From Asterias rubens (taxonomy: Eukaryota): a stretch of 64,000 nt of DNA. Shown here piece after piece: positions 9,708 through 46,700 of the stretch. The translations under genes were made by a program, and so were the position numbers. The DNA lies in NCBI RefSeq assembly GCF_902459465.1, contig NC_047065.1, positions 2,542,001 through 2,606,000 of the forward strand, read 5' to 3'. How positions within the stretch are numbered: position 1 is the first letter of the stretch; every line of letters begins with the position of its first letter. Below the pieces are notes generated by a model, which made no database searches, was not told the DNA's origin, and was given only the letters and a program-made list of their open reading frames with translations.

Positions 9708-9748
9708 ACTGCATACCTTTTTAAAATGGTATCCATCTTAATTAAGGA

Positions 9749-12700
9749 CTAAACTTTCCTTCTAATCTTCATCTCAGTTGTTTTGAGTGAGCGCCAACCC
9801 GAAAAGCCAGCCCACACAATTCCTTCTTGGTTCGTAGTGGCCTCATTGAAGTATCTCCCGTTCAAATTGGAGTAGTAGCAGGCACTGTACCACCAGGCTC
9901 CGTGCCATCGCTCAGCACAGTTATAAATACTCTTGGCATCGTTGTCTCGGTCTTTGGTCGTAAAGGCCTGGTTATTGTGGGGTGATAACTTGTCTCCTGA
10001 AAGATAACACACGTAGCCATTATAGTCATACGTGTAAATAAAGGCGATGTTGACAGGAGGTAACTTTAAACATTAATTTGTTTCGAACATAACTTAGGCC
10101 GATAAGGTGCGATTAGAAACAAATTTATCAATTAATGGAACTGGGATATTGGGAGAAGTGAAGTAAATGTTTCACAATCAGGTCCAATTTTAACTGCATT
10201 TTGTTTTCTTTTTAAAGCCATTGGACACATTCTGAACAGAACCAAAAGTTAAAAGTTCACAGATTTACAAATAACTTACAAAGTTTACAGAAGGTACTGG
10301 TGAAAGACTTCCCTTGAAATATTATTCCATGAAACGCTTTACTTTTTGAGAAAACATTAAAACACCTATAAATTTTCGATATCAACAATAACAGATTTAT
10401 TATAAACACATGTCATGACATGGCGAAACGTGCGGAAACAAGAGTGGGTTTTCCCGTTATTTTCTCCTGCCTCCGATGACCGATTGAGCCTAACTTTTCA
10501 CAGGTTTGTTGTTTTATATTATTATACGTTGTGATACACGAAGTGGCCTTTGGACAATACTGTTTACCGATGACAGTTTAATAAGATAGTTAGAAAATTG
10601 CTATCGAAATGGGATTTAAAAGCAACGTTTATACGTTATATTTGTTCTCCTCCAAATTGTGGTTTTACGATTCTGTTAAATGTTTCTAGCGAGTTTAAAA
10701 TGGCTGAATTCAAGTTATTTGTCGTACATTTTGTCATTTTTTAGTTTCAAGGGATTAACATCATCTTCCTCTTTTTTACTTGGTGTTGGGCAGCAAAGGA
10801 TACACCCCTCCAATTTCGGCTTGGTTTGAGCAGCAAGTGATGCAAAATTCTACTCCTCCTTTTTCCGTCTGGAGTTGAGGAACAAAACAAAAACAATTCC
10901 CCCTCCACTTTTTAAGGCACTCCAGACACTATCGGTTATTACTCAAAATGATTATTAGAAACCTACTTGAACTAGCATTGGAGAGATGTGAACATTGTGA
11001 GAAACGGCTCCCTCTGAAGGAACGTAGTTTTTGAGAAAGAGGTGATTTCTCATTCAACTATTTGAATCACGATGTTTCTTTTCTCTCTTTCATTGACACC
11101 AACCAAAAGCAATCGGTCACAGCGATAAACACAGACTACCCTGCCATATTTTTGTATAACTACGAAGTTTCCACTTATAGCATCTTACCTGCGGTTCCAG
11201 AGTAACTTCCTACCATCAGCCGGTAGTTATCGCTCACATCGGCGATGCTGAACGAGCCATAAATAGCAAAGCCGGTATCGTCGTCGAGGCCTGTGAGATC
11301 TACGCGGAGTTCGTACTCGCCCTGAGCAGTCAGACGGTGCAAGTTGTCGTTACCCAGCCAAAACTCTCCCTCTAGATTCCCAAAGCCCCGGCTGTAGTTG
11401 GCAAAGTCCAAATAGAAATCTACACTGCCGTCCTGACGCCGCTGGAAAACCTATCAAGGGAACGTGGAGGTTTTTAAAATAACCCTGGTCTTCTTTGACT
11501 TGATCAAACTTATTCTTATTTACAAATATTCGTAGAGATGAGTACTATCTAATTCACTATAATCCGTGAACTTACCGTCCATCCACCACCGTCTGTTTCC
11601 ATATCACAGTATACCTGGAAAGCTTCACCGGAGTCTAGAGGTTGTACCGAGTACACGCCACTGATCAATTCACCCCTCGCAAGAGTCTCGGAACAATCAT
11701 TTGGAGGGGCAACTGTACAATAATATTTTATGTAAACATTAAAAAAAAAAGTTTTTATTTCACCAACTGTAAGGACATAGATGTTATAATTTAAAGGCAG
11801 TGGACACTATTGGTAATTACTCAAAATAATTATTAGCATAAAACTTTACTTGGTAATGAGTAATGGGGAGAGGTTGATGGTATAAAACATTGTGAGAAAC
11901 GTCTGCATCTGAAGTGACGTAGTTTTCGAGAAAGAAGTATTTTTCCACGAATTTGAGTTCGAGACCTCAAGTTTAGAATTTGAGGTCTCGAAATCAACCA
12001 TCTAAAAGCACACAACTTCGTGTGACAAGGGTGTTTTTCTTTCATTATTAACTCGCAACTTCGACGACCGATTGAGCTTAAATTTGCACAGGTTTGTTAT
12101 TTTATGTATATGTTGAGATACACCAAGTGAGAAGACTGGTCTTTGACAATTACCAATAGTGTGTCCACTGTCTTTAAGAGAGTGATAATAAAGTCTCAAC
12201 GTGTTTTTGAAAAAAAATTAAAGTCACCTTGCAGTGGTATTTTGTCAAAATAAAGCTTTTGTCACTAAAATATGTGTTTTGATGAGTGGAATATGAATAC
12301 ACAATTAACTAAGGTTTAAAAAAATTAGTTTCCATGTAATTTACAAATTTGAAAATAAGCCCGACCCAAGAGGGCGCTGTTCCTCACGTCAATCGAGGCG
12401 CGATGAATCGCATGCAGTGCCAACACAAGATAATGACGCTTGGCGTAAGCTAAAAACATGCCCTCAAAGTTGAAACAATACCTGATTTTTTTCACGTTAC
12501 GCAAATGCTCCTTTAGGTTAGTTACGTCTTTCAGGTACCTTCTTCGACTTCCCAACTAGCTGGAAAAATTGTTGGTATGGCGTCATGTTTTAGAAAGGAA
12601 CTTTTCTCTTCATGTCAAAATGTGTAGTGTATTCCGGATTCTCGAAGCACGACGGCTCGGAGTGTTTGCTGCACAGCGCTGGAAAAGATTTGCAAACTGA

Positions 12701-13889
12701 CCCCATCTTTAGTTGATTAGCTGCATCCAGCCATCAGCAATACACCTGGGCCCAATTTCATAGCGCTGCTTAGCGGCCGATTTTGTGCTTATTGTGCGAT
12801 TTCCATTTCATAGCCCTGCTAACCGTAAGCACACGAAAATGCATGCTAACCTTCCGATGCTTACCACACGAAAATAAATGACGTCACAATGCAAATCCAT
12901 GGTAAACACGCAATATGGCCGCCCAATTTTTCTGCTAACCTGTGAAATACGCTAAGGCTTAAGCAAATTGTTCTGCTACAGTAAGCACGCAAATTTGCTT
13001 ACCGTAAGCAGCGCTATGAAATTGGGCCCTGGTCGACATTGCCGAAAAAAATGCAAGAAAAAAACTTTTTCGAAACGTACAAACTCACGACTAGGACTTG
13101 AATGTACTTGCTCGTACGTGTGTTCGATGTTTGATCGAGGCAAAGTCTGCCTCGATTGACGTCACAAAAGGGGTAGGCGGAGTCACCCCCACACAACTTT
13201 AATTAATTGTTTAAACATATAAATCGTTAAAAACAATTACTCAAAACATTATTTTATTGTTAAGAAACATATACTCTAATGTTTGAAAACAAAATCATCT
13301 ATTTCCAGGTGACTTTAAGCTGCTTTTCCAAGGTCCAGTAAAGTATTTCTATTTCTACAGCACGGCTTGACGTTACCAACAAAGTTATCTTCGGCTTCGT
13401 GAACAATCTTTCTATAGCCTTTATTATAATGTATGTAAAAGCAATAAACTTACGTCTAACATGAAGGAATTCAACCAAGTTAGAAACAGACACTTGAAGA
13501 TCATCAAGCTGTCGTCTTAAACCCTGTACCTCCGAGGAGACCGCTGAGACTGTGTTCTGCAATTCCTCGACTGTACGTTTAGTATCAGTAAGCTCGGAGG
13601 AAACAGTCTCCTGATTTGCTGCGACTGTGAACTGCAACTCATCTTGACGTATTGATACTGTATGAAGTATTTCCTGGACGGTCGTACAGTTGTAGCCGCC
13701 GGTACCGGAGTTCACGGGAACGGATCGCCCGCAAACTGGCGGGTTGACTGTGATGTGTGGCTGGCACACACATCGTTCAGTCTCGCTCGTTGTGTAGGGC
13801 CCAATGCTATGCTGAGTTTGGGATCTTGCTCTCATAGCAAACACGGCTAGGAAGACCAACAGGGTCATTTTCATACAAGCTGGTTCCAT
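9749..13889 (-). CDS. Secreted fibrinogen-related protein (FReD; ficolin/angiopoietin/fibroleukin-like, no collagen), copy 1, intact, 360 aa
   Basis: Exons 13454-13889, 11576-11712, 11189-11450, 9749-9996, all with GT-AG junctions and phases 1/0/1 giving a 1083-nt open frame. Motifs: [60 protein letters not shown]. Hydrophobic N-terminus [16 protein letters not shown]. Confidence 0.93.
11795..12173. mobile_element. MITE family A in intron 1 of FReD copy 1
   Basis: TTAA|AGGCAGTGGACACTATTGG ... CCAATAGTGTGTCCACTGTCT|TTAA. Confidence 0.88.
12222..13314. mobile_element. 1.1-kb TTAA-flanked non-autonomous DNA transposon (Kolobok-like family C) in intron 1 of copy 1
   Basis: TTAA|AGTCACCT ... AGGTGACT|TTAA; contains the nested element 12749-13028. 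Confidence 0.8.
12749..13028. mobile_element. Nested Harbinger-like MITE
   Basis: CTG|GGCCCAATTTCATAGCGCTGCTTA ... TAAGCAGCGCTATGAAATTGGGCC|CTG; 3-bp CWG duplication. Confidence 0.88.
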
Positions 13890-15096
13890 TTATAAGGCAA
13901 ACTGATAAACAATAAATGTAATTTTGCAGGCAGTTTCGTACTTTCAGTTCAGACAAGACGACTTATTATGGTTTAACTTTTGCTGTGACGCACTAACAAA
14001 AATGTTTGGTCAACAGTGAAAACATTGGTTTATTTGCTTTGCGCACAAAAATATTGTTTCTTTGTCAACCATTGGACCAAAACCTACACCAACAAAGGTT
14101 GCTTTTCGATGTATCCATTGACTTTGGGACACTATTCCAACAAGTATGAGGAAGTACATACATGTACACTGCATTACACTTGTATACAGTGGTAGGTAGC
14201 GCAAAGTTAATCTGTGCACTGTCTGGGATGATTTTATTTTGTACTTGTCTTCTTTTTTCAAACTAGATTTGGAACAAGCTTAACAAAATCGACGTTTTAC
14301 CTCAAAATCAGTTGTGGCCGAAGAAGGATACGTCATGTTTAATTGGAGAAGCTGCATAAATTATAACAATCGCCGTGTGACAAGAGTATCCGCGATGTGC
14401 CCAACACATACAGTTGGTCTTTAAAGCTGCAAGAAAATAAATTGCAAGAAAATAGTTGCACAGAATTGTGTGTTTTCAGATGCCTGAGACAGGCTTCATG
14501 CTAAAGCCTTTCTCAGGTTCAATTTTTGTGTGTGAAAAGTAACCTCTTTCTCTAAAACTACATTAATCAAAAGGGTGTCATTTCTAACAACATTTGATAA
14601 CATCAACAGCTCTCCAGTGCTCTTAAAGCCATTGGACCCTTTCTGAATAGAACAAAAATTTAAAGTTCACAGATTTACAAATAACTTACAGGGTTTACAG
14701 AAGGTAATGGTGAAAGACTTTCCTTGAAATATTATTCAATGAAATGCTTTACTTCTTGAGAAAACATTAAAACAATTATCAATTCTCGTTATCGAGAATA
14801 ACGGATTTATTTAAAACACATGTCATGACATGGCGAAACGTGCGGAAACAAGGGTGGGGTCTCCCGTTATTTTCTCCCGACTCCGATGAACGATTGAGCC
14901 TAAATTTTCACAGGTTTGTTATTTTATATATTATTTGTGATACAAGATGTGTGGGCCTTTGGACAATACTGTTTACCGATGTTGTGCGATTGCTTTAACA
15001 AAGTAAGTTTTCATGGTCGTTTGTTTTTTGGAGTAATTACCATTCTACTTTATACCCCGCCTTTAAAGTGTTTTAATTAACTTTTGTTCCATTCAG

Positions 15097-18000
15097 AGGG
15101 AGGTAATACTCGCATTGCGACCACAGAAGATGGGCAGGAGTTGCTGATTGATAGCTCCTATGTGTGTCAGTACTGTGGGAAGAAATTGAAGACATATTAC
15201 CAACTCAAGACGCACATGACCATCCATAAGAATGAGCAGGTAAGAACAGGTGTTCGTTTGTCCATTTTTCTAGATGATCTACCCTTTAAGGAACTCGGCA
15301 AACTCGCGCAAGGGGATATACACACCAAGCTGGCAACAGCCAATCTCTCTTATAAAAACATTGGTTTAATGTCTACGATTAGGAATTATACAAATCAAGA
15401 AACAATACTTATTCTAGTCATTGTAAAATCCGCGATTTGCTTGGAGCCCACAACCTTGCAATAGACCGATCCATTAGTTAGGCTCCGCCCACGGCGCACG
15501 TGTGAGCAAGAACATGTGCGCCTCTCCGATGTCATTCTGCACAACTCTGCCGGGCGCGCCAAGCCTACGCACACGCATGTCGGACCTTAATTTGTCGGAC
15601 TTTTGGTTGCGCAATGGGTTGTGATTGGTCAAAACGTAATGGGGCGGGACTTAATGGATCGGTCTATTGCAAGTCCTGCAGTCTAACCACTGGACCATGT
15701 TGACATGGAATGGGAGGAGAGACATACTTTTTCCTGATCTAAAGGCCTTTTTACATACAGTACCCCAGAGAATTGAAGTAGCCTTTTATGAATGCAAACT
15801 AAAGAGGTCTGATGTACATAGGGGCTTTGAAACCCAATTTGACCCCAAGTGTGATTATCATTGTTACAGGTGTACAAGTGCGTTCTAAAATTCTGCAATA
15901 CAACCTACAAGGATCAGTTAGGACCAGATACTCGTCCTAACTTAGGACTATCCATGCAATTTGTATATCTCCTTGGACTTGTCCTAAGTTAGGAGTAGTC
16001 CTAACTCTGTGTGAAATCGACCCCTGGACACTAGCCAGTCGTCTAGAGAAGAGACTGGACGGCTGCTATACGAGAATGCTTCGCTGTGTTAAACAGATTC
16101 ATTGGGACAGGCATGTCACAAACCTGGAACTTTACGGTGGACTACCGAGAGTTAGCACCAAGATTAGGGCAAGAAGGCTGAGACTAGCAGGTCACTGTGT
16201 CAGACCGTCAGACATGCTGAGCTGGCAGTGAGCAAGCTTGTGCTTTGGGTCCCTACTCAAGGTCACTGTTCCCCTCTGGACTGCGTCGGGAAGAGCTGCG
16301 TACAGCAATGGAGGACCAACGTGTTTGGAGGGCCACCATCCGATGCTCCGCATCGACTGAATGAATTAAAATCTTCTTCTTCCTTTCAAGTGCTGCTTCA
16401 ATAATTGAAGATTACCGCACTGCGGCTGGGCGCGTGAAACCATGAGACCGTAAGCCAATCTCAAGTGCGAGTGTTATAATGACAAATTATAGCACTTCTG
16501 TTTCCCTTCGGCCTTGTTGGATAATGGATAAGGGACCCAGACGCACTATATTTTTCCATACACAAGCTTTCAGGCAAACATGATGCACAGCTTAATGCAA
16601 TATGCGGTGTTGGAACAGCACAATATGCAGGGTGTGTTTATGGGCCATGCAATAGAAGTCACACCTCTTGTTGCTAAGGGTCGAACAATCAGAATCGAGG
16701 ATTCAAGTCTGCTGTCAATACAGAAATAAATTTACTCACACAGAAGAAGATGCAAGTTGATACGTTCAGTTCTTACTGCACTGTTTCCCCAAAAAGCAAC
16801 AAATCTGTTTTAGCCACACCAGTTGCGATATGCCAACAAGTCAACATTTCAAAGCTTTATATTATGGTTATAACCAAACCTGTTTCAGTTGAATTGTCCT
16901 TAAGTCAATTATTGGCCAATGACTGCAACAGTTATTGGTTACAGTTGGGAAAACAAACCCCAAGTAGGAAATGTTCAAAGGATATTTAAAGACACTGGAC
17001 ACTATTAGTAATTGTCAAAGACTAGTCTTCACAGTTGGTGTATCTCAACATAATATGCATAAAATAACAAACCTCATTATTTTGTCTCATTTGTTGATAC
17101 ACAGCGGGGATAAACCGTACAAGTGTGATGCTTGTGAGAAGACGTTCAACCGCCCGGATAAGCTAAAGAGACATAACCTCACTCACGATCCTGTCAAGAA
17201 ACTCAAATGTCCGTTCCGCTCCTTGACTGGATGCGAGAAGATGTTCAACCGTCCTGATAAACTCAAAGCACATATCATATCACAAAGCGGCATCAAGCCC
17301 TTTAAGTGTCCGCAGTGTTTCAAGTGTTTCAGCCGACGCCCCAATTTGGCGGAGCATATGCGAATTCATACCGATGACTATACCATTCGTTGTAAAGTAT
17401 GTAATAAAGGATTCGCCCGTGAGAAATATAAGAATGCTCATAATTGTCCGAGATGGGCACAAACAAGGGAAGCACTGAAATCCAATATAGAATGTGACAT
17501 GAATGAATCTGTCCTTGGTGATTTGTCAAACGAAGCTTTGAAACAAACTGAATCCATCGTCGATGCCAAGTCTCCATCTCACAACATCTCCAAACATAAT
17601 GAGAAACCCGAAGAAGTACATCCAGTTCTCTTAACTAAGACAAGGCAAGTCAGACTCAGGCACTCTGGTTTCTCTATAGAAGGTTCATATGCTTGACGAC
17701 ACGGTCACGAGTGAGGCTCCGAGGAGTAGACGATGGCGTGGCGGAGCAAGAGGCAGGCCAAGACGTGTCACTCAGAAGAGAAAAATTCAGAATTGATCGA
17801 CGGAGGATATTGAGAGAGACTTAGAGGCTATCAGGAGTGGCTTGGAGGAGCAGCAACGACAGGAGATGGAGAGACAGAAAGCCAACCAGGAATCCGCAGA
17901 GCATCAACAAGATGGGGATCTGATGGCAGGAAGCTCACAGATGATAACGATCATGGTGACCCCTGACCAGGAGGTGGTCAGTGTCACATCGGGAGAGACG

Positions 18001-18111
18001 GTCACTTTGAAACAGCAACAACAGCCAACTATTTCAACTCTACTGCTATTGCACTTCGATCACCATTCTCCGCTTACAAGCAAGTGCCGAATTTCTGCGC
18101 CAGCTCTGTAA
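15097..18111 (+). pseudogene. ZNF341: ZNF341 genomic fragment, unit 2
   Basis: Copy of unit 1. Exon 15097-15239 is in frame here ([27 protein letters not shown]); finger ORF 16971-17696. Confidence 0.85.
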
Positions 18112-20100
18112 GCGTAGAATTCCTAAGTAACATGGAATACGCTTGGCACAAGCCAAAATTCCCTGCTAACCAGTGAAATAAGCTTGACATAAGTATTGTC
18201 ATCTGTTCTTTTTACACAATCAATGCATTTCTTATCTTTAGGATAGGAGTCATTTTTCTGAAATGAAATATCAAAAATAATGAACACAATCAATGTTTTT
18301 TTTTACTGATTCCAATCACACACTGTCAAATTCAATCATTGTTATTAACTAAATGAACTTTTAGACAAATCTTTGTATATGTGCATTTAATTCCTGAACC
18401 ATCATAGACATCTGTGACAGACAGGGGCCTTATTTCATGGCTCTGCTTACCGTAAGCAAAGAATCAGCGCTTGCGGATCAGGGAGTTCCATGCTGATGTT
18501 AAGCGTATTTCATGGTTAGCTGGGAACTTTTGCTGCTGCATACTCCAATATACTAGGCATTCTTTGCTTACACAGCTAGCACAGAAAACCTGTGCTTGGC
18601 TTTCACAGTAAGCGAATAATGGGGATCGTAAGTGCAGACTTCAGCAGTAAGCAAAGCCATGAAATTGAGCCCATATGAACTGGATAATTTAAAAAAAAAA
18701 AACTAATCATGAGGATATTCAATCTTGTGAAATTTAGATATTATTGTTAGAACTGTATTAATAGGACAAATCTTTGCTGAGGTGATATTTATTTGTTTAC
18801 AGTGTTTCATTGGATGACATTTTATCTAGTTGTACATCTTTATATGTTTTAAAGGTGTACATTGTGGCCATTGTGCAGAAGATTAGATTAAGTTCATCTT
18901 TTAGCTTTCAATAGGAGACTTTCAAACGCTAGGTGGCAGCAGACATACCGGGTAAATTTCCCTTGTTTACGTAGTTCTGAACATGCGCATAATTCTGAGA
19001 ACAATGGATTTACCCGGTAAGTCTGCTGCCCTCTATCGTCCCAGAAAGTCTCCCATTGTCACACCAAATCAACATACGTGAAATATTCATCAAATTCAGT
19101 GACCACAAACAAAAGGGCTTTCTTATTGCTATAAGGAGTTTGTATTATTTTAGGCTCATTTTGATTGCAACAATTGAAATAATCAGCAGTTTTGTTTGCA
19201 AGGTTATAAAATCTATTTTACTCAAGCTTTGATGGTGTGTTAGATGGAAGTACTTCTCTGGAGGATTGGTACTAGTGAACCATTTAAATCTGTGAGTTTC
19301 CACATTGAAAGTAGTTATTTTCCCCCAGGAAACTTTGTCTTCTAAAACGATGTGTTTTCATTTATTGAATGATGTATACATGTACATGTATGTATGCCAA
19401 TTGAGGTGTTTGAAATTATTAAACCAAACTTAAAAGGTCCAGAATGTTGTATTCAGAAGAAAGCTGTTGAGTTGTTTTGTTTTTGTGTATATTTAATGAG
19501 TCAAACAAAGACTGAGGCAAGAAAAGATTGCTGTAGCAAAACAATAAAAAACGCCAGAAATTGGTGGCAAGGTCGTAATTTTTAACCTTATCGCAAATAC
19601 TCTGTACGTGCACAATAGACGTGGAATGAGATGCATGGTGGTCTAGCTATAGCTATCAAATTTGGGTACTAGCTAGACCAGCATGCACCTCATTCGGCAG
19701 TTTGCGCCTGCGCAATGGTATTTGCGAAAAGGTCTGTGGGTGCATAGCACCACTAGTAAATAAACTCCCGAGCACAGATGTGCATAATGTTATAATACAC
19801 AAACAAGTTGCAAGATAATAATGAAAGAAAAAAACACCCTTGTCACACGGTGACGAAGTTGTGTGCTTTCTGATGCTTGATTTCTAGACCTCAAATTCTC
19901 TGAGGTCTCGAAATCAAGATCGTGGAAAATTACTTCTTTCTCGAAAACTACGTCACTTAATACTAAACGTGTCCAGCCGTCATTTTCACCAAACTCTGCC
20001 TAACTTTAGAATCAATTTTAGGGCTTAGGACGAGTTCAGTTCCGTAACCATGGGCCTATGATGTTACGACGCATTGAACCCATCTCCTATAGGACGAGTT

Positions 20101-22786: not shown

Positions 22787-25311
22787 CTAAACTTTCCTTC
22801 TAATCTTCATCTCAGTTGTTTTGAGTGAGCGCCAACCCGAAAAGCCAGCCCACACAATTCCTTCATTGTTCGTAGTGGCCTCATTGAAGTATCTCCCGTT
22901 CAAATTGGAGTAGTAGCAGTTATAGTACCACCATGCTCCGTGGTATAGCTCAGCACAGTTATAACTACTCCGGTCATCGTTGTCTCGGTCTTTGGTCGTA
23001 AAGGCCTGGTTATTGTGGTGTGCTAACGAGTCTCCTGAAAGATAACACACGTAGCCATTATAGTCACGTGTAAATAAAGGCGACTGTTGACAGGAGGTAA
23101 CTTTAAACATTAATTTGTTTCGAAAATAACTTAGGCCGATAAGGTGTGATTAGAAACAAATTTATCAATTAATGGAACTGGGATATTGGGAAAAGTGAAG
23201 TTAATGTTTCACAATCAGGTTCATTTGTTTAACTGCATTTTGCTTTCTTTATTTAAGTCACAGTTTAATAATATAGTTCGAAAATTGCTATCGAATTTAA
23301 GCATTTTTATTTGTTAAAATTGTCCCCTCTTAAGTGTGGTTTTACGATTCAATAAAAATGTTTATAACAAGCTTGAATTTCATATGTTTCGCTTAGTTTT
23401 GGCTACAAGGGATGCAAAATTCCACCCCTTCTCTTCCGTCTGGAGCTGAGGAACAAAACATAGACAATTCCCCCTCCACTTTTAAAGGCACTCCAGACAC
23501 TATTGGTTACTACTCAAAATGATTATTAGAAACCTACTTGAACTAGCATTGGAGAGATGTGAACATTGTGAGAAACGGCTCCCTCTGAAGGAACGTAGTT
23601 TTTTGAGAAAGAGGTGATTTCTCATTCAACTATTTGAATCACAATGTTGCTTTTCTGTCTTTCATTGAGACCTACCAAAAGCAATCGGTCACAGCGATGG
23701 ACACAGACTACTCTGCAATATGTCTGTATTACTACGAAGTATCCACTTAAAGGCAGCGGACACCATTGGTAATTACTCAAAATAATGCAGAACAGGCTCC
23801 CTCTGAAGTAATTAAGGTTTTGAGAAAGAAGTAATTTTCCACGAATTTGATTTCGAGACCTCAGATTTAGAATTTGAGGTCTCGAAATCAAGCATCTGAA
23901 ATACACATCTTCGTGTGACAATGGTGTTTTTTCTTTCATTATTATCTCGCAACTTCGACGACCGATTGAGCTCAAATTTTCACAGGTTTGTTATTTTATG
24001 CATGATGTTGAGATACACCAACTGTGAAGACTAGTCTTTGACAATTACCAATAGTGTCCAGTGCTTTAAAGCATCTTACCTGCGGTTCCAGAGTAACTTC
24101 CCACTGTAAGCCGGTAGTTGTCGCTCACATCGGCGACACTGAACGAGCCATACAAAGCAAAGCCGGTATCGTCGTCGGGGCCTGTGAGATCTACGTGGAG
24201 TTCGTACTCGCCCTGAGCAGTCAGACGGTGCAAGTTGTCGTTACCCAGCCAAAACTCTCCCTCTAGATTCCCAAAGCCCCGGCTGTAGTTGGCAAAGTCC
24301 AAATAGAAATCTACACTGCCGTCCTGACGCCGCTGGAAAACCTATCAAGGGAACGTGGAGGTTTTTAAAATAACCCTGGTCTTCTTTGACTTGATCAAAC
24401 TTATTCTTATTTACAAATATATTCGTAGAGATGAGTACTATCTAAATCACTATAATCCGTAAACTTACCGTCCATCCACCACCGTCTGTTTCCATATCAC
24501 AGTATACCTGGAAAGCTTCACCGGAGTCTAGAGGTTGAACCGGGTACACGCCACTGATCAATCCACCACTTGCAAGAATCTCGGAACAATCCTTTCGAGG
24601 GTTAACTGTAGTCAACAATAAAAACATTTCAGTTTTTTTTTTAGTAACTGTAAGTACCTAATTGTTATAATTTATTTGCCCCAATTCTATGCAAATTATA
24701 CGTGTATGCTTAAAGAGATTGATAACCAAGTTCTCAACGTGTTTTCGGACACACACATTTAACATACTTATCAAGGTCAAGACGGTGTCTAATACAATCT
24801 TTATATTTCCACGGCACTGCTTGACCTTACCAACAAAGTTATCTTCGGCTTCGTGAACAATATTGTTCAATTTTTTGGCAAACTTACGTCTAACATGAAG
24901 GAATTCAACCAAGTTAGAAACAGACACTTGAAGATCTTCAAGCTGTCGTCTTAAACCCTGGACCTCCGAGGAGACCGTTGAGACGGTGTCCTGCAATTCC
25001 TCGACTATACGTTTAGTATCGGTCAGCTCGGAGGAAACAGTATCTACTTTACGTGTTGTATCTTCTTGATTTATTGATACTGTACGAAGTATTTCCTGGA
25101 CGGTCGTACAGTTGTAGCCGCCGGTACCGGAGTTCACGGGAACGGATCGCCCGCAAACTGGCGGGTTGACTGTGATGTGTGGCTGGCACACACATCGCTC
25201 AGTCTCGCTCGTTGTGTAGGGCCCAATGCTATGCTGAGTTTGGGATCTTGCTCTCATAGCAAACACGGCTAGGAAGACCAACAGGGTCATTTTCATACAA
25301 GCTGGTTCCAT
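22787..25311 (-). CDS. FReD copy 2, intact, 356 aa
   Basis: Exons 24888-25311, 24469-24605, 24080-24341, 22787-23034; GT-AG; same phases and FBG motifs as copy 1. Confidence 0.93.
23751..24065. mobile_element. MITE family A in intron 3 of copy 2 (orthologous copy 34237-34551 in copy 3)
   Basis: TTAA duplication at 23747-23750 and 24066-24069; empty site in copies 1 and 4. Confidence 0.88.
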
Positions 25312-37543: not shown

Positions 37544-38800
37544 GAGTATCGATGTAATAAATGCATGAACCGTTATTCAACCCCGGAGGCCTTAGAACAC
37601 CACTTAGCAACAACGACCCATCACTACGGCTGCCCACACTGTAAGAAGGTCTTCCCATGTGAACGGTACCTCCGCCGCCATCTCCCAACCCACAGCGCTC
37701 ATGGGCAGTTCACATGCCACGTCTGTCAGAAATCCTTCAAGACTGATCACTATATCTTAAGTCTCATTTGCTGATACACAGTGGGGATAAACCGTACAAG
37801 TGTGATGCTTGTGAGAAGACGTTCAACCGCCCAGATAAGCTAAAGAGACATAAATATCACTCACGATCCTGTCCAGAAACTCAAATGTCCGTTCCGCTCC
37901 TTGACTGGATGCGAGAAGATGTTCAAACCGTCCTGATAAACTCAAAGCACATATCATATCACATAGCGGCATCAAGCCCTTTAAGTGTCCGCAGTGTTTC
38001 AAGTGTTTCAGCCGACGCCCCAATTTGGCGGAGCATATGCGAATTCATACCGATGACTATACCATTCGCTGTAAAGTATGTAATAAAGGATTCGCCCGTG
38101 AGAAATATAAGAATGCTCATAATTGTCCGAGATGGGCACAAACAAGGGAAGCACTGAAATCCAATATAGAATGTGACATGAATGAATCTGTCCTTGGTGA
38201 TTTGTCAAACGAAGCTTTGAAACAAACTGAATCAATCGTCGATGCCAAGTCTCCATCTCACAATATCTCCAAACATAATGAGAAACCCGAAGAAGTACAT
38301 CCAGTTCTCTTAACTAAGACAAGGCAAGTCAGACTCAGGCACTCTGGTTTCTCTATAGAAGGTTCATATGCTTGACGACACGGTCACGAGGGAGGCTCCG
38401 AGGAGTAGACGATGGCGTGGCGGAGCAAGAGGCAGGCCAAGACGTGTCACTCAGAAGAGAAAAATTCAGAATTGATCGACGGAGGATATTGAGAGAGACT
38501 TAGAGGCTATCAGGAGTGGCTTGGAGGAGCAGCAACGACAGGAGATGGAGAGACAGAAAGCCAACCAGGAATCCGCACAGCATCAACAAGATGGGGATCT
38601 GATGGCCGGAAGCTCACGGATGATAACGATCATGGTGACCCCTGACCAGGAGGTGGTCAGTGTCACATCGGGGAGAGACGGTCACTTTGAAACAGCAACA
38701 ACAGCCAACTATTTCAACTCTACTGCTACTGCACTTCGATCACCATTCTCCGCTTACAAGCAAGTGCCGAATTTCTGCGCCAGCTCTGTAAGCGTAGAAT
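37544..38800 (+). pseudogene. ZNF341: ZNF341 terminal-exon fragment, unit 4
   Basis: Near-identical to unit 3, with extra single-base indels (~37925, ~38673). Confidence 0.88.
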
Positions 38801-41091
38801 TCCTAAGTAACATGGAATACGCTTTGCACAAGCCAAAATTCCCTGCTAACCAGTGAAATAAGCTTGACATAAGTGCAGAATTCCGTGCTTCCGCGAGCGC
38901 AGATTATTTGCTTACAGTAAGCAGAGCCATAAAATTTTGGCCCAGGTCCTGCTGGCCAGTCACTAAAATAGTAAAGGGCAAACCTGTGGCCATAACTTGT
39001 CCACTCTCCAATGAAAAACAAAAAGGTTTTACAAAGGAACAAGTGAAACATTAGAATAGATGTCTTTGTAATTTCTTGGCTTAGAGATTGCCCAACTTCC
39101 TAATTGGAAAGTATCTATCTAGTTGGGTGCAGTATTGACCTGGACTAATATCGACCTGGATTAATACTGACCTGGTCGTAGTATTGACATCTGTTCTTTT
39201 TACACAATCAATGCACTTCTTATCTTAGGATAGGAGTCATTTTTCTGAAACGAAATATCAAAAATAATTAACATAATCAATGTTTTTTTACGGATTCCGA
39301 TCACACACTGTCAAATTCAATCATTGTTATGAACTAAATGAACAAATATTTTAGACAAATCTTTGTATATGTCCTTTTAATTCCTGAACCATCATAGACA
39401 TCTGTGACAGACAGGGGCCTTATTTCATGGCTCTGCTTACCGTAAGCAAAGAATCAGCGCTTGCGGAATCAGGGAGTTCCATGCTGATGTTAAGCGTATT
39501 TCATGGTTAGCTGGGAACTTTTGCTGCTGCATACTCCAATATACTAGGCATTCTTTGCTTACACAGCTAGCACAGAAAACCTGTGCTTGGCTTTCACAGT
39601 AAGCGAATAATGGGGATCGTAAGTGCAGACTTCAGCAGTAAGCAAAGCCATGAAATTGAGCCCATATGAACTGGATAATTTAAAAAAAAAAAACTAATCA
39701 TGAGGATATTCAATCTTGTGAAATTTAGATATTATTGTTAGAACTGTATTAATAGGACAAATCTTTGCTGAGGTGATATTTATTTGTTTACAGTGTTTCA
39801 TTGGATGACATTTTATCTAGTTGTACATCTTTATATGTTTTAAAGGTGTACATTGTGGCCATTGTGCAGAAGATTAGATTAAGTTCATCTTTTAGCTTTC
39901 AATAGGAGACTTTCAAACGCTAGGTGGCAGCAGACATACCGGGTAAATTTCCATTGTTTACGTAGTTCTGAACATGCGCATAATTCTGAGAACAATGGAT
40001 TTACCCGGTAAGTCTGCTGCCCTCTATCGTCCCAGAAAGTCTCCCATTGTCACACCAAATCAACATACGTGAAATATTCATCAAATTCAGTGACCACAAA
40101 CAAAAGGGCTTTCTTATTGCTATAAGGAGTTTGTATTATTTTAGGCTCATTTTGATTGCAACAATTGAAATAATCAGCAGTTTTGTTTGCAAGGTTATAA
40201 AATCTATTTTACTCAAGCTTTGATGGTGTGTTAGATGGAAGTACTTCTCTGGAGGATTGGTACTAGTGAACCATTTAAATCTGTGAGTTTCCACATTGAA
40301 AGTAGTTATTTTCCCCCAGGAAACTTTGTCTTCTAAAACGATGTGTTTTCATTTATTGAATGATGTATACATGTACATGTATGTATGCCAATTGAGGTGT
40401 TTGAAATTATTAAACCAAACTTAAAAGGTCCAGAATGTTGTATTCAGAAGAAAGCTGTTGAGTTGTTTTGTTTTTGTGTATATTTAATGAGTCAAACAAA
40501 GACTGAGGCAAGAAAAGATTGCTGTAGCAAAACAATAAAAAACGCCAGAAATTGGTGGCAAGGTCGTAATTTTTAACCTTATCGCAAATACTCTGTACGT
40601 GCACAATAGACGTGGAATGAGATGCATGGTGGTCTAGCTATAGCTATCAAATTTGGGTACTAGCTAGACCAGCATGCACCTCATTCGGCAGTTTGCGCCT
40701 GCGCAATGGTATTTGCGAAAAGGTCTGTGGGTGCATAGCACCACTAGTAAATAAACTCCCGAGCACAGATGTGCATAATGTTATAATACACAAACAAGTT
40801 GCAAGATAATAATGAAAGAAAAAAACACCCTTGTCACACGGTGACGAAGTTGTGTGCTTTCTGATGCTTGATTTCTAGACCTCAAATTCTCTGAGGTCTC
40901 GAAATCAAGATCGTGGAAAATTACTTCTTTCTCGAAAACTACGTCACTTAATACTAAACGTGTCCAGCCGTCATTTTCACCAAACTCTGCCTAACTTTAG
41001 AATCAATTTTAGGGCTTAGGACGAGTTCAGTTCCGTAACCATGGGCCTATGATGTTACGACGCATTGAACCCATCTCCTATAGGACGAGTT

Positions 41092-41433
41092 AATAATAAT
41101 AATAACCCGTTTTTATATAGCGCTTTACACCAGAAAGGCATCCCAAAGCGCTTCATCGTTATTACCCCTGGTCACTGGGCCTTAAATCACTCCTGAAACC
41201 ATCTCAGCTCCCTGGTAGGGAGTATGCAGCCTGTGCAACATTAATTTGCGCTACTCGGCTAAATCAATCACAAGAACCATCTCTGCCCTCACAGGTACCC
41301 ATTTACCCCTGGGTGGAGAGAAGCAATTATAGTGAAGTGTCTTGCTCAGGGACACAAGTGTCACGACCGGGATTCGAACCCACACTCTGCTGAACAGAAG
41401 CACCAGAGCATCTATCCGCTTGGCCACGACACC
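41092..41433 (-). mobile_element. tRNA-derived SINE (unit 4 copy)
   Basis: Same as 7025-7366. Confidence 0.85.
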
Positions 41434-43774
41434 CTGAGTTACTCGTCCTAACTCGAGATAGGATTTATCCTAGCATTTCGTGAAATCGGCTGCAGTGCCT
41501 TTAATTCTAATTGCAACATTCATTTCAATTCAATTCACTTTATTGTCCCAGATGGGAAATTCAGTTTAGACGAGACGACTTATTTATGCACTAACAAAAA
41601 TGTTTGGTCCACAGTGAAAACACTGGCTTATTTGCTTTGCGCACAAAAATATTGGGTATTTTTTGTCAATCATTGGACCAAAACGTACACCAACAACGTT
41701 GTTTTTCGATCTATCCATTAACCTACACGGGTTAATATTCCAGAAAGTATGAAGTACATATACATGTACACTGCACTACACTTTGTATACAGCGGTAGGT
41801 AGCAAAATTCATTGCACTGTCTGGGCTGATTTTATTTTGTTGTTATTATTATTATTTTTTTTAAACTACACTTGGAACTGACTAACTTATCATGCTTAAC
41901 AAAATCGATGTTTTACCTCAAAATCAGTTGTGGCCGAAGGAGGGTACTTCTCGTTTAATTGAAGAAGTTGCATAAATTATAACAATCGCCGTGTGATGAA
42001 ATGTTACCTGGAAAAAGGGTACACTATGAAAACTATATTGAATATAACTAATAAAACACACTCAAGATCGGGTGGGGAAAAGACGCGAGGAAATGCACAA
42101 AAAAAATAGGAACAGATGACACAAAGTATAGGTTTCTCAAACAAAAATAAAAAATGACTTTATTGATTATAAGACAATTTAACAAAAGCAGTATAAAACA
42201 ATGCAAACCTTAAAAATGATTCTGTTCGGAACTTCAAACAAAGAAAACCAAGTTAAACCTAAACCAAAATAAACTATAAGAAACCTTGACCAAAGCTAAC
42301 AAAAAAACTAAACAAAAATCAAATTAAAATCAAAATGGCTTTTGAAACTGATTCCATAATTATTAGCAGGAAATACACTTGAAGCAGGCAAAATTATGTA
42401 GAAATTAAAACTTAAGCAGAGAGATAAAACAGAAGTGCTCCTTGCGCTGCCAGGCTGCTATCTGATTGTTATTTAAAGATACAATCAATCACAACCTCAA
42501 GTTCAAAATCCATTTAGCAAAATAACCAATCTGTGAAAGTTTCATCACATTGGGATAGCCAGTGAATCCAATCTGAAAGATGTTGAGTACAGGAAATTAG
42601 AAACCTACCCAAGTTGGATCATTACCTGTTACACAGTTGTTTATTTTAGATTCCATTCATAGATTATACTTCTGTCATAGATTATATCTGAGCATTAATT
42701 AACCAGGACATATCCATTGCAGTTAATATTAGTCTTATTAGGCCTACTAAGAGAATAATCGATTTTCCACCATACCGCCATTTGCTTGTTTCAAAGCATT
42801 TGCAGGGGGGGGGGACCCAAACAGAACAATTATTGGGAAAGGAGACAGTTGTGGTTTAAGACACTGGACACTATTGGTAATTGTCAAGGACCAGTCTTCT
42901 TACTTGGAGTATATAATATGCATAAAATAACAAACCTGTGAAAATTTGAGCTCAATTGGTCGTCGAAGTTGCCAGTAGCTATGAAAGAAAAAACAACCTT
43001 GTCACACGAAGTTGTGTGCTTTCAGATGCTTTGCGAGACCTCAAAATCCAGTTCTGATGTCTCATAATCAAGTTCGTGGACACTTACTTCTTTCTCGAAA
43101 GCGCGTCACTTCAGAGAGAGCCGTTACTCACAATGTTGTATACTATCAACCTCTCCCCATTACTCGTTACCAAGATTTTATGCTAATAACTATTTGGAGC
43201 AATTACCAATAGTGTCCACTGCCTTTAAAAAGGCGTCGATCTAGTATGGAACCGTATTAAGCCCTTTTTAATGTTCGTATATATCTAAATTCTATAGGAA
43301 CAACTTTCATGACAAAACTTACAAAATAAAATATTGTATTCGATTCAACAAGCCACCGCATTGTTTATAAAAACACTAGCATCCACTCTCATTATACGAG
43401 TCGGATTTAGAACGGGTTATATTAGAAGGGTATCTTGAGAGTTTTATAAGCAATGCGTTTGTACTTGGAAGTCTTACATACTATACTGGTCGTATTGGGT
43501 TTAAAGTGACATTCCTTATTAGTTACTTTCTGCAACTATTTTAGCTACCCGATGTCACGATTTTTATACATGTCTCATTTAATCCATTGCATTAAAAGTT
43601 AATTCACATTAAATTGTTTTCCATGTTTTCCATTTTTAGGTTTCAAAGTACAGGTTTAATTATTTTTGTTTAAAAATTTACGAGAAACTTAATAAGGTGA
43701 AGCGAATAGGTGATTTATGAGGAGATGTTTATTACTGTGTACCTTTTTATAATGGTATCCATCTTAATTAAGGA

Positions 43775-46700
43775 CTAAACTTTCCTTCTAATCTTCATCT
43801 CAGTTGTTTTGAGTGAGCGGGAAGCCGAAAAGCCATTCCACCTAATTCCTTCGTTGTTCGTAGTGGCCCAATTGAAGTATCTCCCGTTCAAATTGGAGGC
43901 GGCGCAGGAATAGTACCACCAGGCTCCGTGGCGGTCCTGGGCACAGTTACCACTACTCCATAAATCGTTGTCTCGGTCTTTGGTCGTAAAGGCCTGGTTA
44001 TTGTGGTATGCTAACCAGTCTCCTGAAAGATAACACACGTAGCCATTATAGTCACGTGTAAATAAAGGCGACTGTTGACAGGAGGTAACTTTAAACATTA
44101 ATTTGTTTCGAACATAACCTAGGCCGATAAGGTGGGATTAGAAACAAATTTATCAATTAATGGAACTGGGATATTGGGAGAAGCTGCATTTTGTTTTCTT
44201 TTTAAAGCCATTGGACACATTCTGAACAGAACCAAAAGTTAAAAGTTCACAGATTTACAAATAACTTACAAAGTTTACAGAAGGTACTGGTGAAAGACTT
44301 CCCTTGAAATATTATTCCATGAAACGCTTTACTTTTTGAGAAAACATTAAAACACCTATCAATTTTCGATATCAACAATAACGGATTTATTATAAACACA
44401 TGTCATGACATGGCGAAACGTGCGGAAACAAGAGTGGGTTTTCCCGTTATTTTCTCCTGACTCCGATGACCGATTGAGCCTAACTTTTCACAGGTTTGTT
44501 GTTTTATATTATTATACGTTGTGATACACGAAGTGCCCTTTGGACAATACTGTTTACCGATGACAGTTTAATAAGATAGTTAGAAAATTGCTATCGAAAT
44601 GGGATTTAAAAGCAACGTTTATACGTTATATTTGTTCTCCTCCAAATTGTGGTTTTACGATTCTGTTAAAATGTTTCTAGCGAGTTTAAAATGGCTGAAT
44701 TCAAGTTATTTGTCGTACATTTTGTCATTTTTTAGTTTCAAGGGATTAACATCATCTTCCTCTTTTTTACTTGGTGTTGGGCAGCAAAGGATACACCCCT
44801 CCAATTTCGGCTTGGTTTGAGCAGCGAGGAATGCAAAATTTTACCCCTCCTTTTTCCGTCTGGAATTGAGGAACAAAACATAGACAATTCCCCCTCCAAT
44901 TTTAAAGGCACTCCAGACACTATCGGTTATTACTCAAAATGATTATTAGAAACCTACTTGAAATAGCATTGGAGAGATGTGAACATCGTGAGAAACGGCT
45001 CCCTCTGAAGGAGCGTAGTTTTTTGAGAAAGAGGTGATTTCTTATTCAACTATTTGAATCACGATGTTGCTTTTCTGTCTTTCATTGAGACCTACCAAAA
45101 ACAATCGGTCACAGCGATAAACACAGACTACCCTGCAATATTTCTGTATAACTACGAAGTATCCACTTATAGCATCTTACCTGCGGTTCCATTGTAACTT
45201 CCTACAGTCAGCCGGTAGTTATCGCTCACATCGGCGATGCCGAACGATTCATACAAGGCAAAGCCGGTATCGTCGTCGAAGCTTGTGAGATCTACGCGGA
45301 GTTCGTACTCGCCCTGAGCAGTCAGACGGTGCAAGTTGTCGTTACCGAGCCAAAACTCTCCCTCTAGATTCCCAAAGCCCCGGCTGTAGTTGGCAAAGTC
45401 CAAATAGAAATCTACACTGCCGTCCTGACGCCGCTGGAAAACCTATCGAAGACAAATTAACGCACATCATTTTGAATGGCTTTGTGTTCACATAACATTT
45501 TAGACTTTACACTTCTAAAAAATGTGTATTTTGGATGGAAAGTCCTCCATTGTCTTACCGTCCAGCCTCCGCCGTCTGTCTCCATATCACAGTACACCTT
45601 GAATGGCCTACCGGAGTCCGGCTTCGCGGCATAAACGCCACTGCGTGCCTCACCTCGTGCGAGCACGTCGGAACAATCTCTGACTCCTTATATAAAAAAC
45701 AAGATAATGATTTTTAGTATAGATGGAAAACAGAATACCAGGACAAGATTGAAATGAGAATCATCTACTATATCCCTCTCTTTAAAGTCACTGAATACTA
45801 TTGGTAACTACTCAAAATAATCGTTAGCATAAAACTTACTTGGTAATGAGCAATGGAGAGCTGTTGATGGTATAAAACAGTGTAAGAATTGAAACGGCTC
45901 CCTCTGAAGTAACGTAGTTTTCGAGAAAGAAGTATTTTCCAACTTAAATACTTGAATAGCCTTGCTCAAGGCAGTCGCATTATTCGCTCCAAAAGACGCC
46001 GCTGTAAACCCATCCGTATACCCTGTGCGTGGTGCGTGCGATCACACCGCATGACCCACCCGTATACACACTGTCACATCGTACGACTACTGTGCACACA
46101 AGTCATCCGCACTCGTACCACTAACCGCATGCGGAGGCGGCCTCCACATGCGGATAGTGTACGGGGGCATCGTGTCGTGCGATACGCACAGTGAATACGG
46201 GTGGGTTTTTATATAGCGGCGGTCTTTTTTCGGAGTGAATAATTCGACTTTCTTGAGCAAGGCTAATACTTGAATTGAATTTGAGACTTCAGCTGAGGTC
46301 TCGAAATCAAGCGTCTGAAAGCACACAACTTGTGCGACAAGGGCGTTTTTCTTTCTTTATTCTCTTGCAACTTCTACGACTATTTGACTCCCTAATTTCA
46401 CAGGTTTGTTATTTTATGCATTATTTTTTTACTGTCGAGTTATACCAAGTGAAAACACTGGTCTTTGACAATTACTGAAGGCGTCCAGTGCCTTTAAACA
46501 TACGAACTCTCTTAATGTAAAAGAGTGAAAAAAACACTCCTTTTGTCCGCCATACCACTCTTGCAAAGAGCCATATGACGAAAAACTCTTTTTAGAGTGA
46601 AAGACGGGTACTTTCAACTAAATTTAGAGTGAAGTTTGTTCCAATTTCACTCAAAAAGAGTAACACAGATTAACTTTCACTCTCAAAAGAGCGAAAGTGA

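What the first reader, a model, noticed from the sequence alone, without database searches (positions are those of the whole stretch)
9749..44022. Hypervariable ligand-binding exon in a near-identical FReD tandem array: signature of diversifying selection
Seen (manual count, exon 4, 81 aa): copy 1 vs 2 has 11 amino-acid changes and 1 synonymous codon; copy 2 vs 4 has 16 changes and ~3 synonymous; copy 1 vs 4 has 20 changes. The adjacent intron differs at only ~4 of 155 nt and the C-terminal [13 protein letters not shown] is invariant. Changes cluster in GD.L..H, DND....NCA...HG, WY..C..SN and GI.W.GFS.. and include several multi-nucleotide codon changes to or from W/Y/R. Established: these loops form the P-subdomain Ca2+/sugar (S1) site of ficolins and tachylectin-5. 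Inference: an innate pattern-recognition family diversifying its specificity.
Basis: partly seen in the sequence, partly recalled or inferred. Interest (0 to 1): 0.78.

Follow-up and report, generated by a model that had tools for sequence, protein, structure and literature searches.

The report
Hypervariable binding pocket in starfish lectins
A tandem row of starfish (Asterias rubens) genes for secreted fibrinogen-type lectins is almost identical in its non-coding DNA, yet the genes differ at about twenty codons that line the sugar-binding pocket, which is the mark of strong selection for new binding specificities.

Summary
The window is Asterias rubens chromosome LR699095.1 at about 2.54 Mb. 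It holds four minus-strand FReD (fibrinogen-related domain) genes, c1 to c4, plus exon 1 of a fifth. The last 160 nt of the intron differ at 4-5 positions. The 3' flanks of c2 and c4 have no difference over about 2.9 kb.

I added 13 relatives from A. rubens and A. amurensis. A codon site model then gives M2a vs M1a LRT = 187, with 22% of exon-4 codons at omega about 10. Five of the seven residues equivalent to the TL5A/FIBCD1 S1 pocket are among the selected sites. Synonymous divergence in exon 4 is low, so this is not simply old sequence that escaped homogenisation.

Copy 3's exon 4 is unreadable (22 gap columns against c2) and is probably assembly noise.

The immune role is inferred. Recombination between copies is shown, and gene conversion probably contributes to the exon-4 diversity.

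The scan already reported this pattern at another A. rubens locus (s1-178640). This is a new member of a known kind, the diversified FReD lectins.

A roughly 190-nt intronic block next to exon 4 is more conserved than synonymous sites. I could not explain it.

The parts
9749..9996 (-). c1 exon 4 (81 codons + stop): P-subdomain with the Ca2+ loop and S1 pocket. It is the last exon of NCBI protein P0006.
22787..23034 (-). c2 exon 4, intact.
   Evidence: the gene is called in L011
33257..33518 (-). c3 exon 4: 262 nt with the frame destroyed by about 22 indel columns, some in otherwise invariant codons. Probably unpolished assembly sequence.
43775..44022 (-). c4 exon 4, intact. It is the last exon of NCBI protein P0037.
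23035..23225 (-). Conserved block of about 190 nt at the 3' end of intron 3 (shown for c2; the same block lies upstream of every exon 4). Diversity is 0.02-0.04 across 14 of 16 paralogues in two species.
11189..11450 (-). c1 exon 3. The equivalents are c2 24080-24341, c3 34566-34827 and c4 45181-45442. This is the nearly invariant FBG core, with dN/dS about 0.3.
24469..24605 (-). c2 exon 2, the start of the FBG domain. The equivalents are c1 11576-11712, c3 34955-35091 and c4 about 45559-45686 (c4 is of another type).
24888..25311 (-). c2 exon 1 (signal peptide, Cys-rich part, coiled coil). The equivalents are c1 13454-13889, c3 35374-35797, and a further copy c0 at 62-497 whose other exons lie outside the window.
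47089..47953 (-). c4 exon 1, of a different type (MGLLIRS...), with tandem 25-aa repeats.
3688..9748 (.). Shared 3' flank of the repeat unit (also 17084-22786, 27255-33256 and 37761-43774). c2 and c4 show no difference over about 2.9 kb, and most 200-nt windows of c2, c3 and c4 show 0%. c1 differs from them by 1-2%.

Best explanation
These are germline genes for secreted, probably oligomeric lectins. Each has a signal peptide, a Cys-rich segment, a coiled-coil stalk and a C-terminal fibrinogen-related (FBG/FReD) domain. They belong to a family of dozens of genes in the genus Asterias. The scaffold and the non-coding surroundings stay alike through recent duplication, recombination between copies and purifying selection. 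About 14-18 codons of the last exon are under strong diversifying selection. These codons encode the Ca2+ loop and the walls of the S1 ligand pocket. Each paralogue therefore carries a different pocket, and the animal holds a repertoire of binding specificities. Pattern recognition in innate immunity is the most likely use. Shown here: the gene structure, family membership, the excess of amino-acid-changing substitutions, where they fall relative to the pocket residues, and recombination between array members. Inferred: secretion and oligomerisation, different ligands, and the immune role.
For: Family: Pfam PF00147 scores 250 bits. The FBG domain matches ficolin-2 at E = 2e-67, FIBCD1 at 3e-64 and TL5A at 9e-51. 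Selection within the window: dN/dS is 1.6-2.9, and exon 4 is more diverged than its flanks at p = 1e-4 to 7e-15. Selection across the family: dN > dS in 60 of 66 pairs among 12 genes, with mean dN 0.146 and dS 0.090. Exon 3 shows dN 0.048 and dS 0.158. With 16 genes, M0 omega is 1.83, and M2a vs M1a gives LRT 187 (p = 2e-41) with 22% of codons at omega 10. Selected sites with P > 0.9 are 2, 4, 5, 21, 24, 29, 30, 37, 38, 41, 56, 60, 62 and 67. Five of the seven S1-equivalent residues are selected (p = 0.0013), and nine selected sites lie within one residue of an S1 residue (p = 2e-4). Between syntenic copies of the two species, exon-4 dS is 0.03-0.05, matching the ~5% neutral divergence, while dN is 0.10-0.16. 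Hypervariable codons keep their third base while positions 1 and 2 change, for example NNG at codons 2 and 21 and NNC at codon 30. Recombination: the copies group differently in exons 1-2, exon 3, the body of intron 3 and the 3' flank. A PHI-type test within exon 4 gives p = 0.006. RNA reads cover exons 2-4 and the 3' UTR but not the adjacent intron.
Against: Site-model likelihood tests give false positives when sequences recombine, and recombination is present here. My codon model is a home-made reimplementation, not codeml. The exon-3 control also gave a small signal (LRT 10, p = 0.007, two sites). The pocket mapping rests on sequence anchors and published residue numbers, not on a structure of these proteins. 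No ligand, tissue or challenge data exist for these genes. The reads were laid at 90% likeness, so paralogues cross-map, and splice joints were swamped by an intronic repeat. No paper on these starfish genes was found.
Confidence: 0.8

Rival explanations
1. Gene conversion or cassette exchange is the immediate source of the differences. Exon-4 variants, or short patches of them, are copied between the many paralogues. The array members then differ because they received different donor sequence, not because each accumulated its own point substitutions. Selection only decides which mosaics persist. This overlaps with the best explanation and is not fully exclusive of it.
For: c4 is a chimera and the segments of the unit group the copies differently. 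c2 and c4 share a 3' flank without a difference over about 2.9 kb, yet differ at 32 of 246 nt in exon 4. That is too many differences to have arisen since those flanks last shared an ancestor. P0003 and P0004 have an identical exon 3 but differ by 27 nt in exon 4. Pocket motifs recur in unrelated paralogues, for example NCAQDRHG in c4 and P0039. PHI gives p = 0.006 at short range. Exon-4 dS (0.09) is lower than exon-3 dS (0.158).
Against: The search for shared fragments found none significant after correction for all pairs, and PHI fades at wider windows (p = 0.14 at w = 20). Conversion alone cannot explain dN > dS or the near-randomised first and second codon positions. The pool of variants still has to be made and kept by selection.
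Confidence: 0.4
2. The variable patches are old sequence that escaped homogenisation. On this view the framework is recently copy-corrected and the islands simply keep ancient neutral divergence, with no positive selection. An earlier follow-up reached this reading for plexin exons in the same genome.
For: The general picture of hypervariable islands in a homogenised frame recurs in this genome for several families. The flanks are much more alike than exon-3 synonymous sites.
Against: Old islands would carry high synonymous divergence. Here exon-4 dS is only 0.03-0.10, about the neutral level or below, while dN is higher. At the hypervariable codons the third base is mostly unchanged. Invariant codons only 1-5 codons from variable ones are identical at the DNA level.
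Confidence: 0.05
3. Assembly artefact: the exon-4 differences come from mis-assembly or poor polishing of a collapsed tandem repeat.
For: Copy 3's exon 4 looks like raw long-read noise. It has 22 gap columns, mostly insertions, some in invariant codons. Copy 3's private differences elsewhere are nearly all 1-nt homopolymer indels. Logan contigs of the best-matching DNA run did not reproduce c2's own letters at 22569 and 22589.
Against: c1, c2 and c4 keep perfect reading frames with substitutions only. The same codons vary in 13 further genes on other chromosomes and in an independent assembly of another species. The six exon-4 variants listed from other runs all fall in selected codons 38, 56, 60, 62 and 67.
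Confidence: 0.03
4. Somatic or otherwise targeted diversification of exon 4, as proposed for snail FREPs. In that case the germline copies are only part of the diversity.
For: Nothing direct. The garbled consensus of copy 3 could in principle reflect reads that disagree. The conserved block next to the exon has no assigned function.
Against: The differences are fixed, in-frame germline differences between paralogues in two species. The adjoining intron is not mutated, unlike in known hypermutation. No extra template copy of exon 4 exists in the window.
Confidence: 0.03

Closest known systems
Human ficolin-1 and ficolin-2, FIBCD1, and horseshoe-crab tachylectin-5A (FBG-domain lectins with an S1 acetyl pocket)
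   Same: The FBG fold family is the same (E from 2e-67 down to 9e-51). The Ca2+ ligands (D17, D19), the Cys26-Cys39 pair and the GIxW strand are all present. The variable positions are the equivalents of the S1 residues.
   Different: There is no collagen-like stalk; the stalk is a Cys-rich segment plus a coiled coil. The canonical S1 residues are not kept. The Tyr405 equivalent takes 8 different residues, the Ala432 equivalent takes 12, the Tyr431 equivalent is Asn, and the loop before it is one residue shorter. Plain acetyl-group recognition cannot be assumed.
Biomphalaria glabrata FREPs
   Same: These are secreted invertebrate FBG proteins in large families. Gene conversion and point mutation are invoked for their diversity, and they have an immune role (PMC12074976).
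   Different: FREPs carry IgSF domains, and somatic diversification is reported for them. The starfish genes have no IgSF domain. Their diversity is germline, between paralogues, and is focused on the FBG pocket.
Mosquito FBN/FREP family (for example Anopheles FBN8)
   Same: This is an expanded FBG family with sites of dN/dS > 1 and a proposed role in pathogen recognition (PMC2811201).
   Different: In FBN8 synonymous diversity exceeds non-synonymous diversity overall, and only a few sites are selected. Here the whole exon has omega 1.8, and a fifth of its codons have omega about 10.
Sea-urchin Sp185/333 (SpTransformer) gene clusters
   Same: This is an echinoderm family of clustered, very similar genes with extraordinary diversity, for which recombination or conversion has been proposed (PMC1988830 and PMC3091723, listed).
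   Different: The protein is unrelated and has no FBG domain. Its diversity comes from element mosaics rather than from pocket codons in a fixed fold.

Membership tests
Fibrinogen_C / FReD domain proteins (PF00147) | Match to the Pfam model above its curated cut-off | tested here: met
   P0006 (= c1) scores 249.8 bits and P0037 (= c4) 242.5 bits, against a cut-off of 22.
Fibrinogen_C / FReD domain proteins (PF00147) | P-subdomain Ca2+ site (DxD) and the Cys pair that links it to the S1 site | tested here: met
   D17, D19, C26 and C39 are present in c1, c2 and c4. C26 and C39 are present in all 16 genes compared at the DNA level. Aa_P0035 reads DRNND, and P0053, compared only as a protein, reads DREYD. 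Spacing was matched to FIBCD1 Asp393/Asp395 and Cys401-Cys414.
Acetyl-group-binding FReD lectins (TL5A, M-ficolin, FIBCD1 type) | Conserved S1 pocket: Tyr (C+4), His (C'+1), Tyr-Ala, and Tyr/Trp | tested here: not met
   The equivalents at positions 30, 40, 55, 56 and 67 read W/Y/R..., Y/A/T/I/H, N, 12 different residues, and W/S/Y/F/N/T. The residues are as listed in PMC3908420.
Ficolins proper | Collagen-like stalk N-terminal to the FBG domain | tested here: not met
   Pfam finds only PF00147 and no collagen repeat. The N-terminal part is Cys-rich followed by coiled-coil repeats. The NCBI name 'ficolin-2-like' is automatic.
Mollusc FREPs | One or two IgSF domains upstream of the FBG domain | tested here: not met
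   No Ig-family Pfam hit.
Gene families under diversifying selection at a ligand site | dN/dS > 1 at sites that map to the binding surface, with purifying selection elsewhere | tested here: met
   The caveat is recombination.
Immune pattern-recognition receptors | Binding to microbial ligands, with expression in immune cells or induction by challenge | not testable with these tools
   The only evidence is that exons 2-4 are covered by RNA reads of one run.

The most novel reading that the evidence does not exclude
Exon 4 and its flanks form a dedicated diversification cassette. The roughly 190-nt intronic block and the start of the 3' UTR are kept more alike than synonymous sites across chromosomes and across two species. 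They would serve as homology arms, or as a control element, for frequent short-tract exchange of pocket-coding sequence among the dozens of paralogues. Exchange in somatic cells is conceivable. That would make this a recombination-driven repertoire generator rather than ordinary paralogue divergence.
Probability: 0.1. Interest if true: 0.85.

Novelty: new member of a known kind. Interest (0 to 1): 0.5.

Why it matters
Sea stars have no antibodies, and it is unclear how they tell the microbes around them apart. This question has become more pressing because of sea-star wasting disease. This family offers dozens of secreted lectins built on one rigid scaffold, each with a pocket rebuilt by selection. 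It is a candidate germline recognition repertoire that can be tested directly with recombinant domains on glycan or microbe arrays. Selection acts on the pocket-lining residues themselves, not only on the rim. This shows that the fibrinogen-type fold can be retargeted well beyond acetyl groups, which is useful for lectin engineering. The sharp contrast between identical flanks and very different pocket codons also makes this a clean natural case for studying how homogenisation between gene copies and diversifying selection act together.

Tried and rejected
1. Read laying (one call allowed). A very high-copy repeat in intron 3 (23510-24116) swamped the joint and loose-end tables. The intron-3 splice joint could not be seen and copy 3 could not be checked. 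Logan contigs of the best DNA run carried other copies' letters.

2. My first exon-1 end (donor after ...LTLI) was wrong. NCBI models and the sequence C|GTAAGT place it after ...HVR.

3. Non-coding RNA in the conserved intron block. Rfam gave no hit there, and the only weak hits lie in the intronic repeat. Folding gives z = -1.1, which is not significant.

4. The intron block as coding sequence. The in-frame extension is broken by indels in c1 and other paralogues.

5. A template-directed (DGR-like) mechanism. This was suggested by codons with randomised positions 1-2 and a fixed third base. It was rejected because there is no extra template copy of exon 4 in the window, the third bases differ from codon to codon, and the differences are stable in the germline of two species.

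6. A GENECONV-like fragment search. Nothing was significant after global correction.

7. The spliced c2 protein could not be sent to the protein tools because no single reference exists for it. I used c1 (P0006) and per-exon references instead.

8. Structure prediction was not run. The tools return no coordinates, so it could not add distances. The mapping was done by sequence anchors and published residue numbers.
Full report
WHAT IS THERE

The window is Asterias rubens chromosome LR699095.1. Locus L011, fetched with protein P0006 from 2,541,749-2,565,889 of that record, holds exon-4 sequences identical to those of window copies c1 and c2.

A self-comparison shows a tandem array with units of about 13.0, 10.5 and 10.5 kb. 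On the minus strand lie four four-exon genes, c1 to c4. Exon 1 of a fifth gene, c0, lies at 62-497.

- Exon 1 encodes a signal-peptide-like start, a Cys-rich stretch and a coiled coil.
- Exons 2 to 4 encode a fibrinogen-related (FBG/FReD) domain.
- c1 is NCBI protein P0006 ('ficolin-2-like', 360 aa) and c4 is P0037 ('fibrinogen-like protein 1', 481 aa).
- c2 is also called as a gene in L011.
- Pfam PF00147 scores about 250 bits.
- The closest solved structures are ficolin-2 (E = 2e-67), ficolin-1, FIBCD1 (3e-64) and tachylectin-5A (9e-51).

CHECK OF THE OBSERVATION

Exon 4 starts right after the acceptor tctttcag at 9996, 23034, 33518 and 44022. In c1, c2 and c4 it is 2 nt + 81 codons + stop.

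| Pair | Amino-acid differences | Synonymous differences | dN/dS |
|---|---|---|---|
| c1/c2 | 11 | 1.5 | 2.78 |
| c2/c4 | 16 | 4.2 | 1.64 |
| c1/c4 | 20 | 3.2 | 2.91 |

- Twenty of the 22 variable codons change the amino acid. Many changes are two- or three-nucleotide changes, such as GAG/TGG, TAC/GCC and GCC/GAC/TTA.
- The last ~160 nt of intron 3 differ at 4-5 positions per pair.
- The first differences downstream of the stop are sparse. Between c2 and c4 there is no difference at all from about 980 to 3880 nt past the stop.
- Exon 4 is much more diverged than its flanks, with Fisher p from 1.5e-4 to 7e-15.

'Near-identical array' needs one qualification. Different segments of the unit tell different histories:
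- c1, c2 and c3 share exons 1-2, while c4 has another type.
- The body of intron 3 groups c1 with c4 and c2 with c3.
- The 3' flank groups c2, c3 and c4 against c1.
- Exon 3 differs by dS 0.05-0.14 between copies.

The array is therefore a patchwork made by recombination between its members.

COPY 3

Its exon 4 (33257-33518) is 262 nt long. Against c2 it has 12 mismatches and 22 gap columns. These are mostly single-base insertions, and several fall in codons that never vary in the family (NQAF, HGAWW, SNLNG).

Outside the exon, copy 3's private differences are almost all 1-nt homopolymer indels. About 13% error dominated by insertions, inside otherwise perfect flanks, looks like unpolished long-read sequence rather than a decayed gene. 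I treat copy 3 as unreadable, not as a pseudogene. This is an inference; the one read-laying run allowed could not address it.

MORE SEQUENCES

Protein searches found dozens of close relatives in A. rubens and A. amurensis. They share an almost invariant scaffold, including about 50 consecutive residues of exon 3 and the C-terminal [13 protein letters not shown]. They vary at the same exon-4 positions.

I fetched the DNA of ten further loci and extracted exon 3, the end of the intron, exon 4 and the UTR. Together with the window's three intact copies this gave 16 distinct genes.

Among the first 12 genes:

| Region | Measure | Value |
|---|---|---|
| Exon 4 | mean dN | 0.146 |
| Exon 4 | mean dS | 0.090 |
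| Exon 3 | mean dN | 0.048 |
| Exon 3 | mean dS | 0.158 |

- Exon-4 dN exceeds dS in 60 of 66 pairs.
- Orthologous non-coding DNA of the two species is about 95% identical.
- Between syntenic copies across species (c1 against Aa_L5a or Aa_P0026), exon-4 dS is 0.03-0.05, matching that neutral value. dN is 0.10-0.16.

SITE MODEL

I wrote a Goldman-Yang-type codon model with F3x4 frequencies, an ML tree from IQ-TREE and all branch lengths optimised. I fitted M0, M1a and M2a.

Exon 4:
- M0 omega is 1.83.
- M2a against M1a gives LRT = 187 (p = 2e-41).
- The site classes are 54% at omega 0.05, 24% at omega 1 and 22% at omega 10.
- Sites with posterior above 0.9 (c1 exon-4 numbering) are 2, 4, 5, 21, 24, 29, 30, 37, 38, 41, 56, 60, 62 and 67.

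Exon 3, used as a control, gives LRT = 10 (p = 0.007) with two sites, 63 and 79.

Recombination inflates such tests, and a PHI-type permutation test does detect short-range recombination in exon 4 (p = 0.006 at w = 5, 0.04 at w = 10, 0.14 at w = 20). The size of the signal and the tree-free pairwise results make the conclusion robust. The exact list of sites is less certain.

WHERE THE SITES LIE

The FIBCD1 structure paper (PMC3908420) gives these residues:
- Ca2+ ligands Asp393 and Asp395.
- The Cys401-Cys414 disulfide.
- The pocket residues Tyr405, His415, Tyr431, Ala432 and Trp443.
- The ligand contacts Glu398 and Asn413.
- TL5A Arg186, equivalent to FIBCD1 Lys381.

I mapped these onto the starfish sequence using the two cysteines, the DxD motif and the GIxW strand as anchors. 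The ficolin alignment shows one gap before GIxW. The equivalents in exon 4 are:
- D17 and D19 for the Ca2+ ligands, and C26 and C39 for the disulfide.
- Positions 30, 40, 55, 56 and 67 for the pocket.
- Position 38 for Asn413 and position 5 for Arg186.

Five of these seven binding residues are selected sites (hypergeometric p = 0.0013). Nine selected sites lie within one residue of a binding residue (p = 2e-4). Sites 21 and 24 are in the Ca2+ loop.

The pocket walls themselves vary. Across the 16 genes, position 30 takes 8 residues and position 56 takes 12. The canonical acetyl pocket is therefore not conserved, and these proteins should not be assumed to bind acetyl groups.

The six exon-4 variants that the read tool listed from four other runs all fall in codons 38, 56, 60, 62 and 67.

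MECHANISM

At the hypervariable codons the first two bases are close to randomised, while the third base is mostly kept. Examples are NNG at codons 2 and 21, NNC at codons 30, 38 and 41, and NNT at codons 24 and 62. Synonymous divergence within the exon is low.

This is what repeated selection for amino-acid change over a short neutral time produces. It argues against the idea that the patches are merely old sequence spared by homogenisation.

The flanks of c2 and c4 are identical while their exon 4 differs at 32 of 246 nt. P0003 and P0004 have an identical exon 3 and 27 differences in exon 4. So much change cannot have arisen since those flanks last shared an ancestor. Either homogenisation repeatedly stopped at exon 4, or exon 4 was replaced from other family members.

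I therefore see concerted evolution plus diversifying selection, with gene conversion as a likely but only weakly demonstrated supplier of variants.

AN UNEXPLAINED FEATURE

The roughly 190 nt of intron directly upstream of exon 4 has a diversity of only 0.02-0.04 in 14 of the 16 genes. These genes lie on several chromosomes in both species.
- This is lower than exon-3 synonymous divergence (0.16), the rest of the intron (0.2-0.4), the 3' flank (0.11-0.2), and even the ~5% neutral divergence between the species.
- The block is not coding, because its frame is broken by indels.
- It has no Rfam match and no significant fold.
- It is lost in the divergent paralogue P0009 and partly deleted in P0034.

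It may be a splicing or regulatory element, or the footprint of conversion tracts centred on exon 4. I cannot tell which.

COMPARISON AND NOVELTY

These genes are members of the FReD superfamily.
- They are not ficolins proper, because they have no collagen stalk.
- They are not mollusc-type FREPs, because they have no IgSF domain.
- They do not meet the conserved-pocket criterion of the acetyl-binding lectins.

Expanded and diversified FReD families are well known in snails and mosquitoes (PMC12074976, PMC2811201). Echinoderms have another diversified clustered immune family, Sp185/333. I found no paper on this starfish family.

The scan itself already reported the same pattern at another A. 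rubens locus (s1-178640). It also holds first-reader notes on further FReD arrays (s1-150695, s1-151355).

I rate this as a new member of a known kind. It is a very clean and strong example, of moderate interest.

Noticed in passing
window 23035-23225 (and upstream of each exon 4): The roughly 190-nt block at the intron 3' end is more conserved (diversity 0.02-0.04) than synonymous sites and than the ~5% neutral divergence between the species. This holds across 14 of 16 paralogues. It has no Rfam hit and no significant fold. A small hairpin (ACACGTG...CACGTGT) sits just before the acceptor.
   Followed up: partly
window 3575-4300 (+); the same sequence lies in the 99.4% duplicate at about 16970-17695: A 241-aa ORF on the opposite strand, inside the shared 3' flank, carries C2H2 zinc fingers (Pfam zf-H2C2_2 at 4.6e-20). 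NCBI calls a 199-aa gene there. It is duplicated together with the lectin unit.
   Followed up: partly
window 23510-24116 (intron 3 of c2): A very high-copy dispersed repeat, with read depth 1,000 to 10,000 times that of its neighbours in all four runs. A palindromic core at 23844-23892 gives weak miRNA-like Rfam hits below threshold.
   Followed up: no
window 8813-9187 and at least 10 other places, in both orientations: A roughly 380-nt dispersed repeat at 75-87% identity (SINE- or MITE-like) occurs in the flanks and introns of the array.
   Followed up: no
window 47209-47733 (c4 exon 1): Tandem 25-aa repeats ([24 protein letters not shown]) lie in the coiled-coil stalk. The repeat number differs widely between paralogues; it is much higher in P0041, for example. 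Stalk length therefore varies as well as the pocket.
   Followed up: no
window 1-4798 vs 13393-18194: A 4.8-kb duplicate at 99.4% identity. It contains exon 1 of a further family member (c0, 62-497) whose remaining exons lie outside the window.
   Followed up: partly
window 27255-37800 (unit of copy 3): This unit carries scattered 1-nt homopolymer indels not seen in the other units, and a garbled exon 4. The assembly is locally of lower quality.
   Followed up: partly
exon 3 codons 63 and 79 (c2: within 24080-24341): Two exon-3 sites (FA[ILVCFN]Y and L[MTSLI]V) also show omega above 1 in the control run. c2 and c3 differ only by amino-acid-changing substitutions in exon 3.
   Followed up: no
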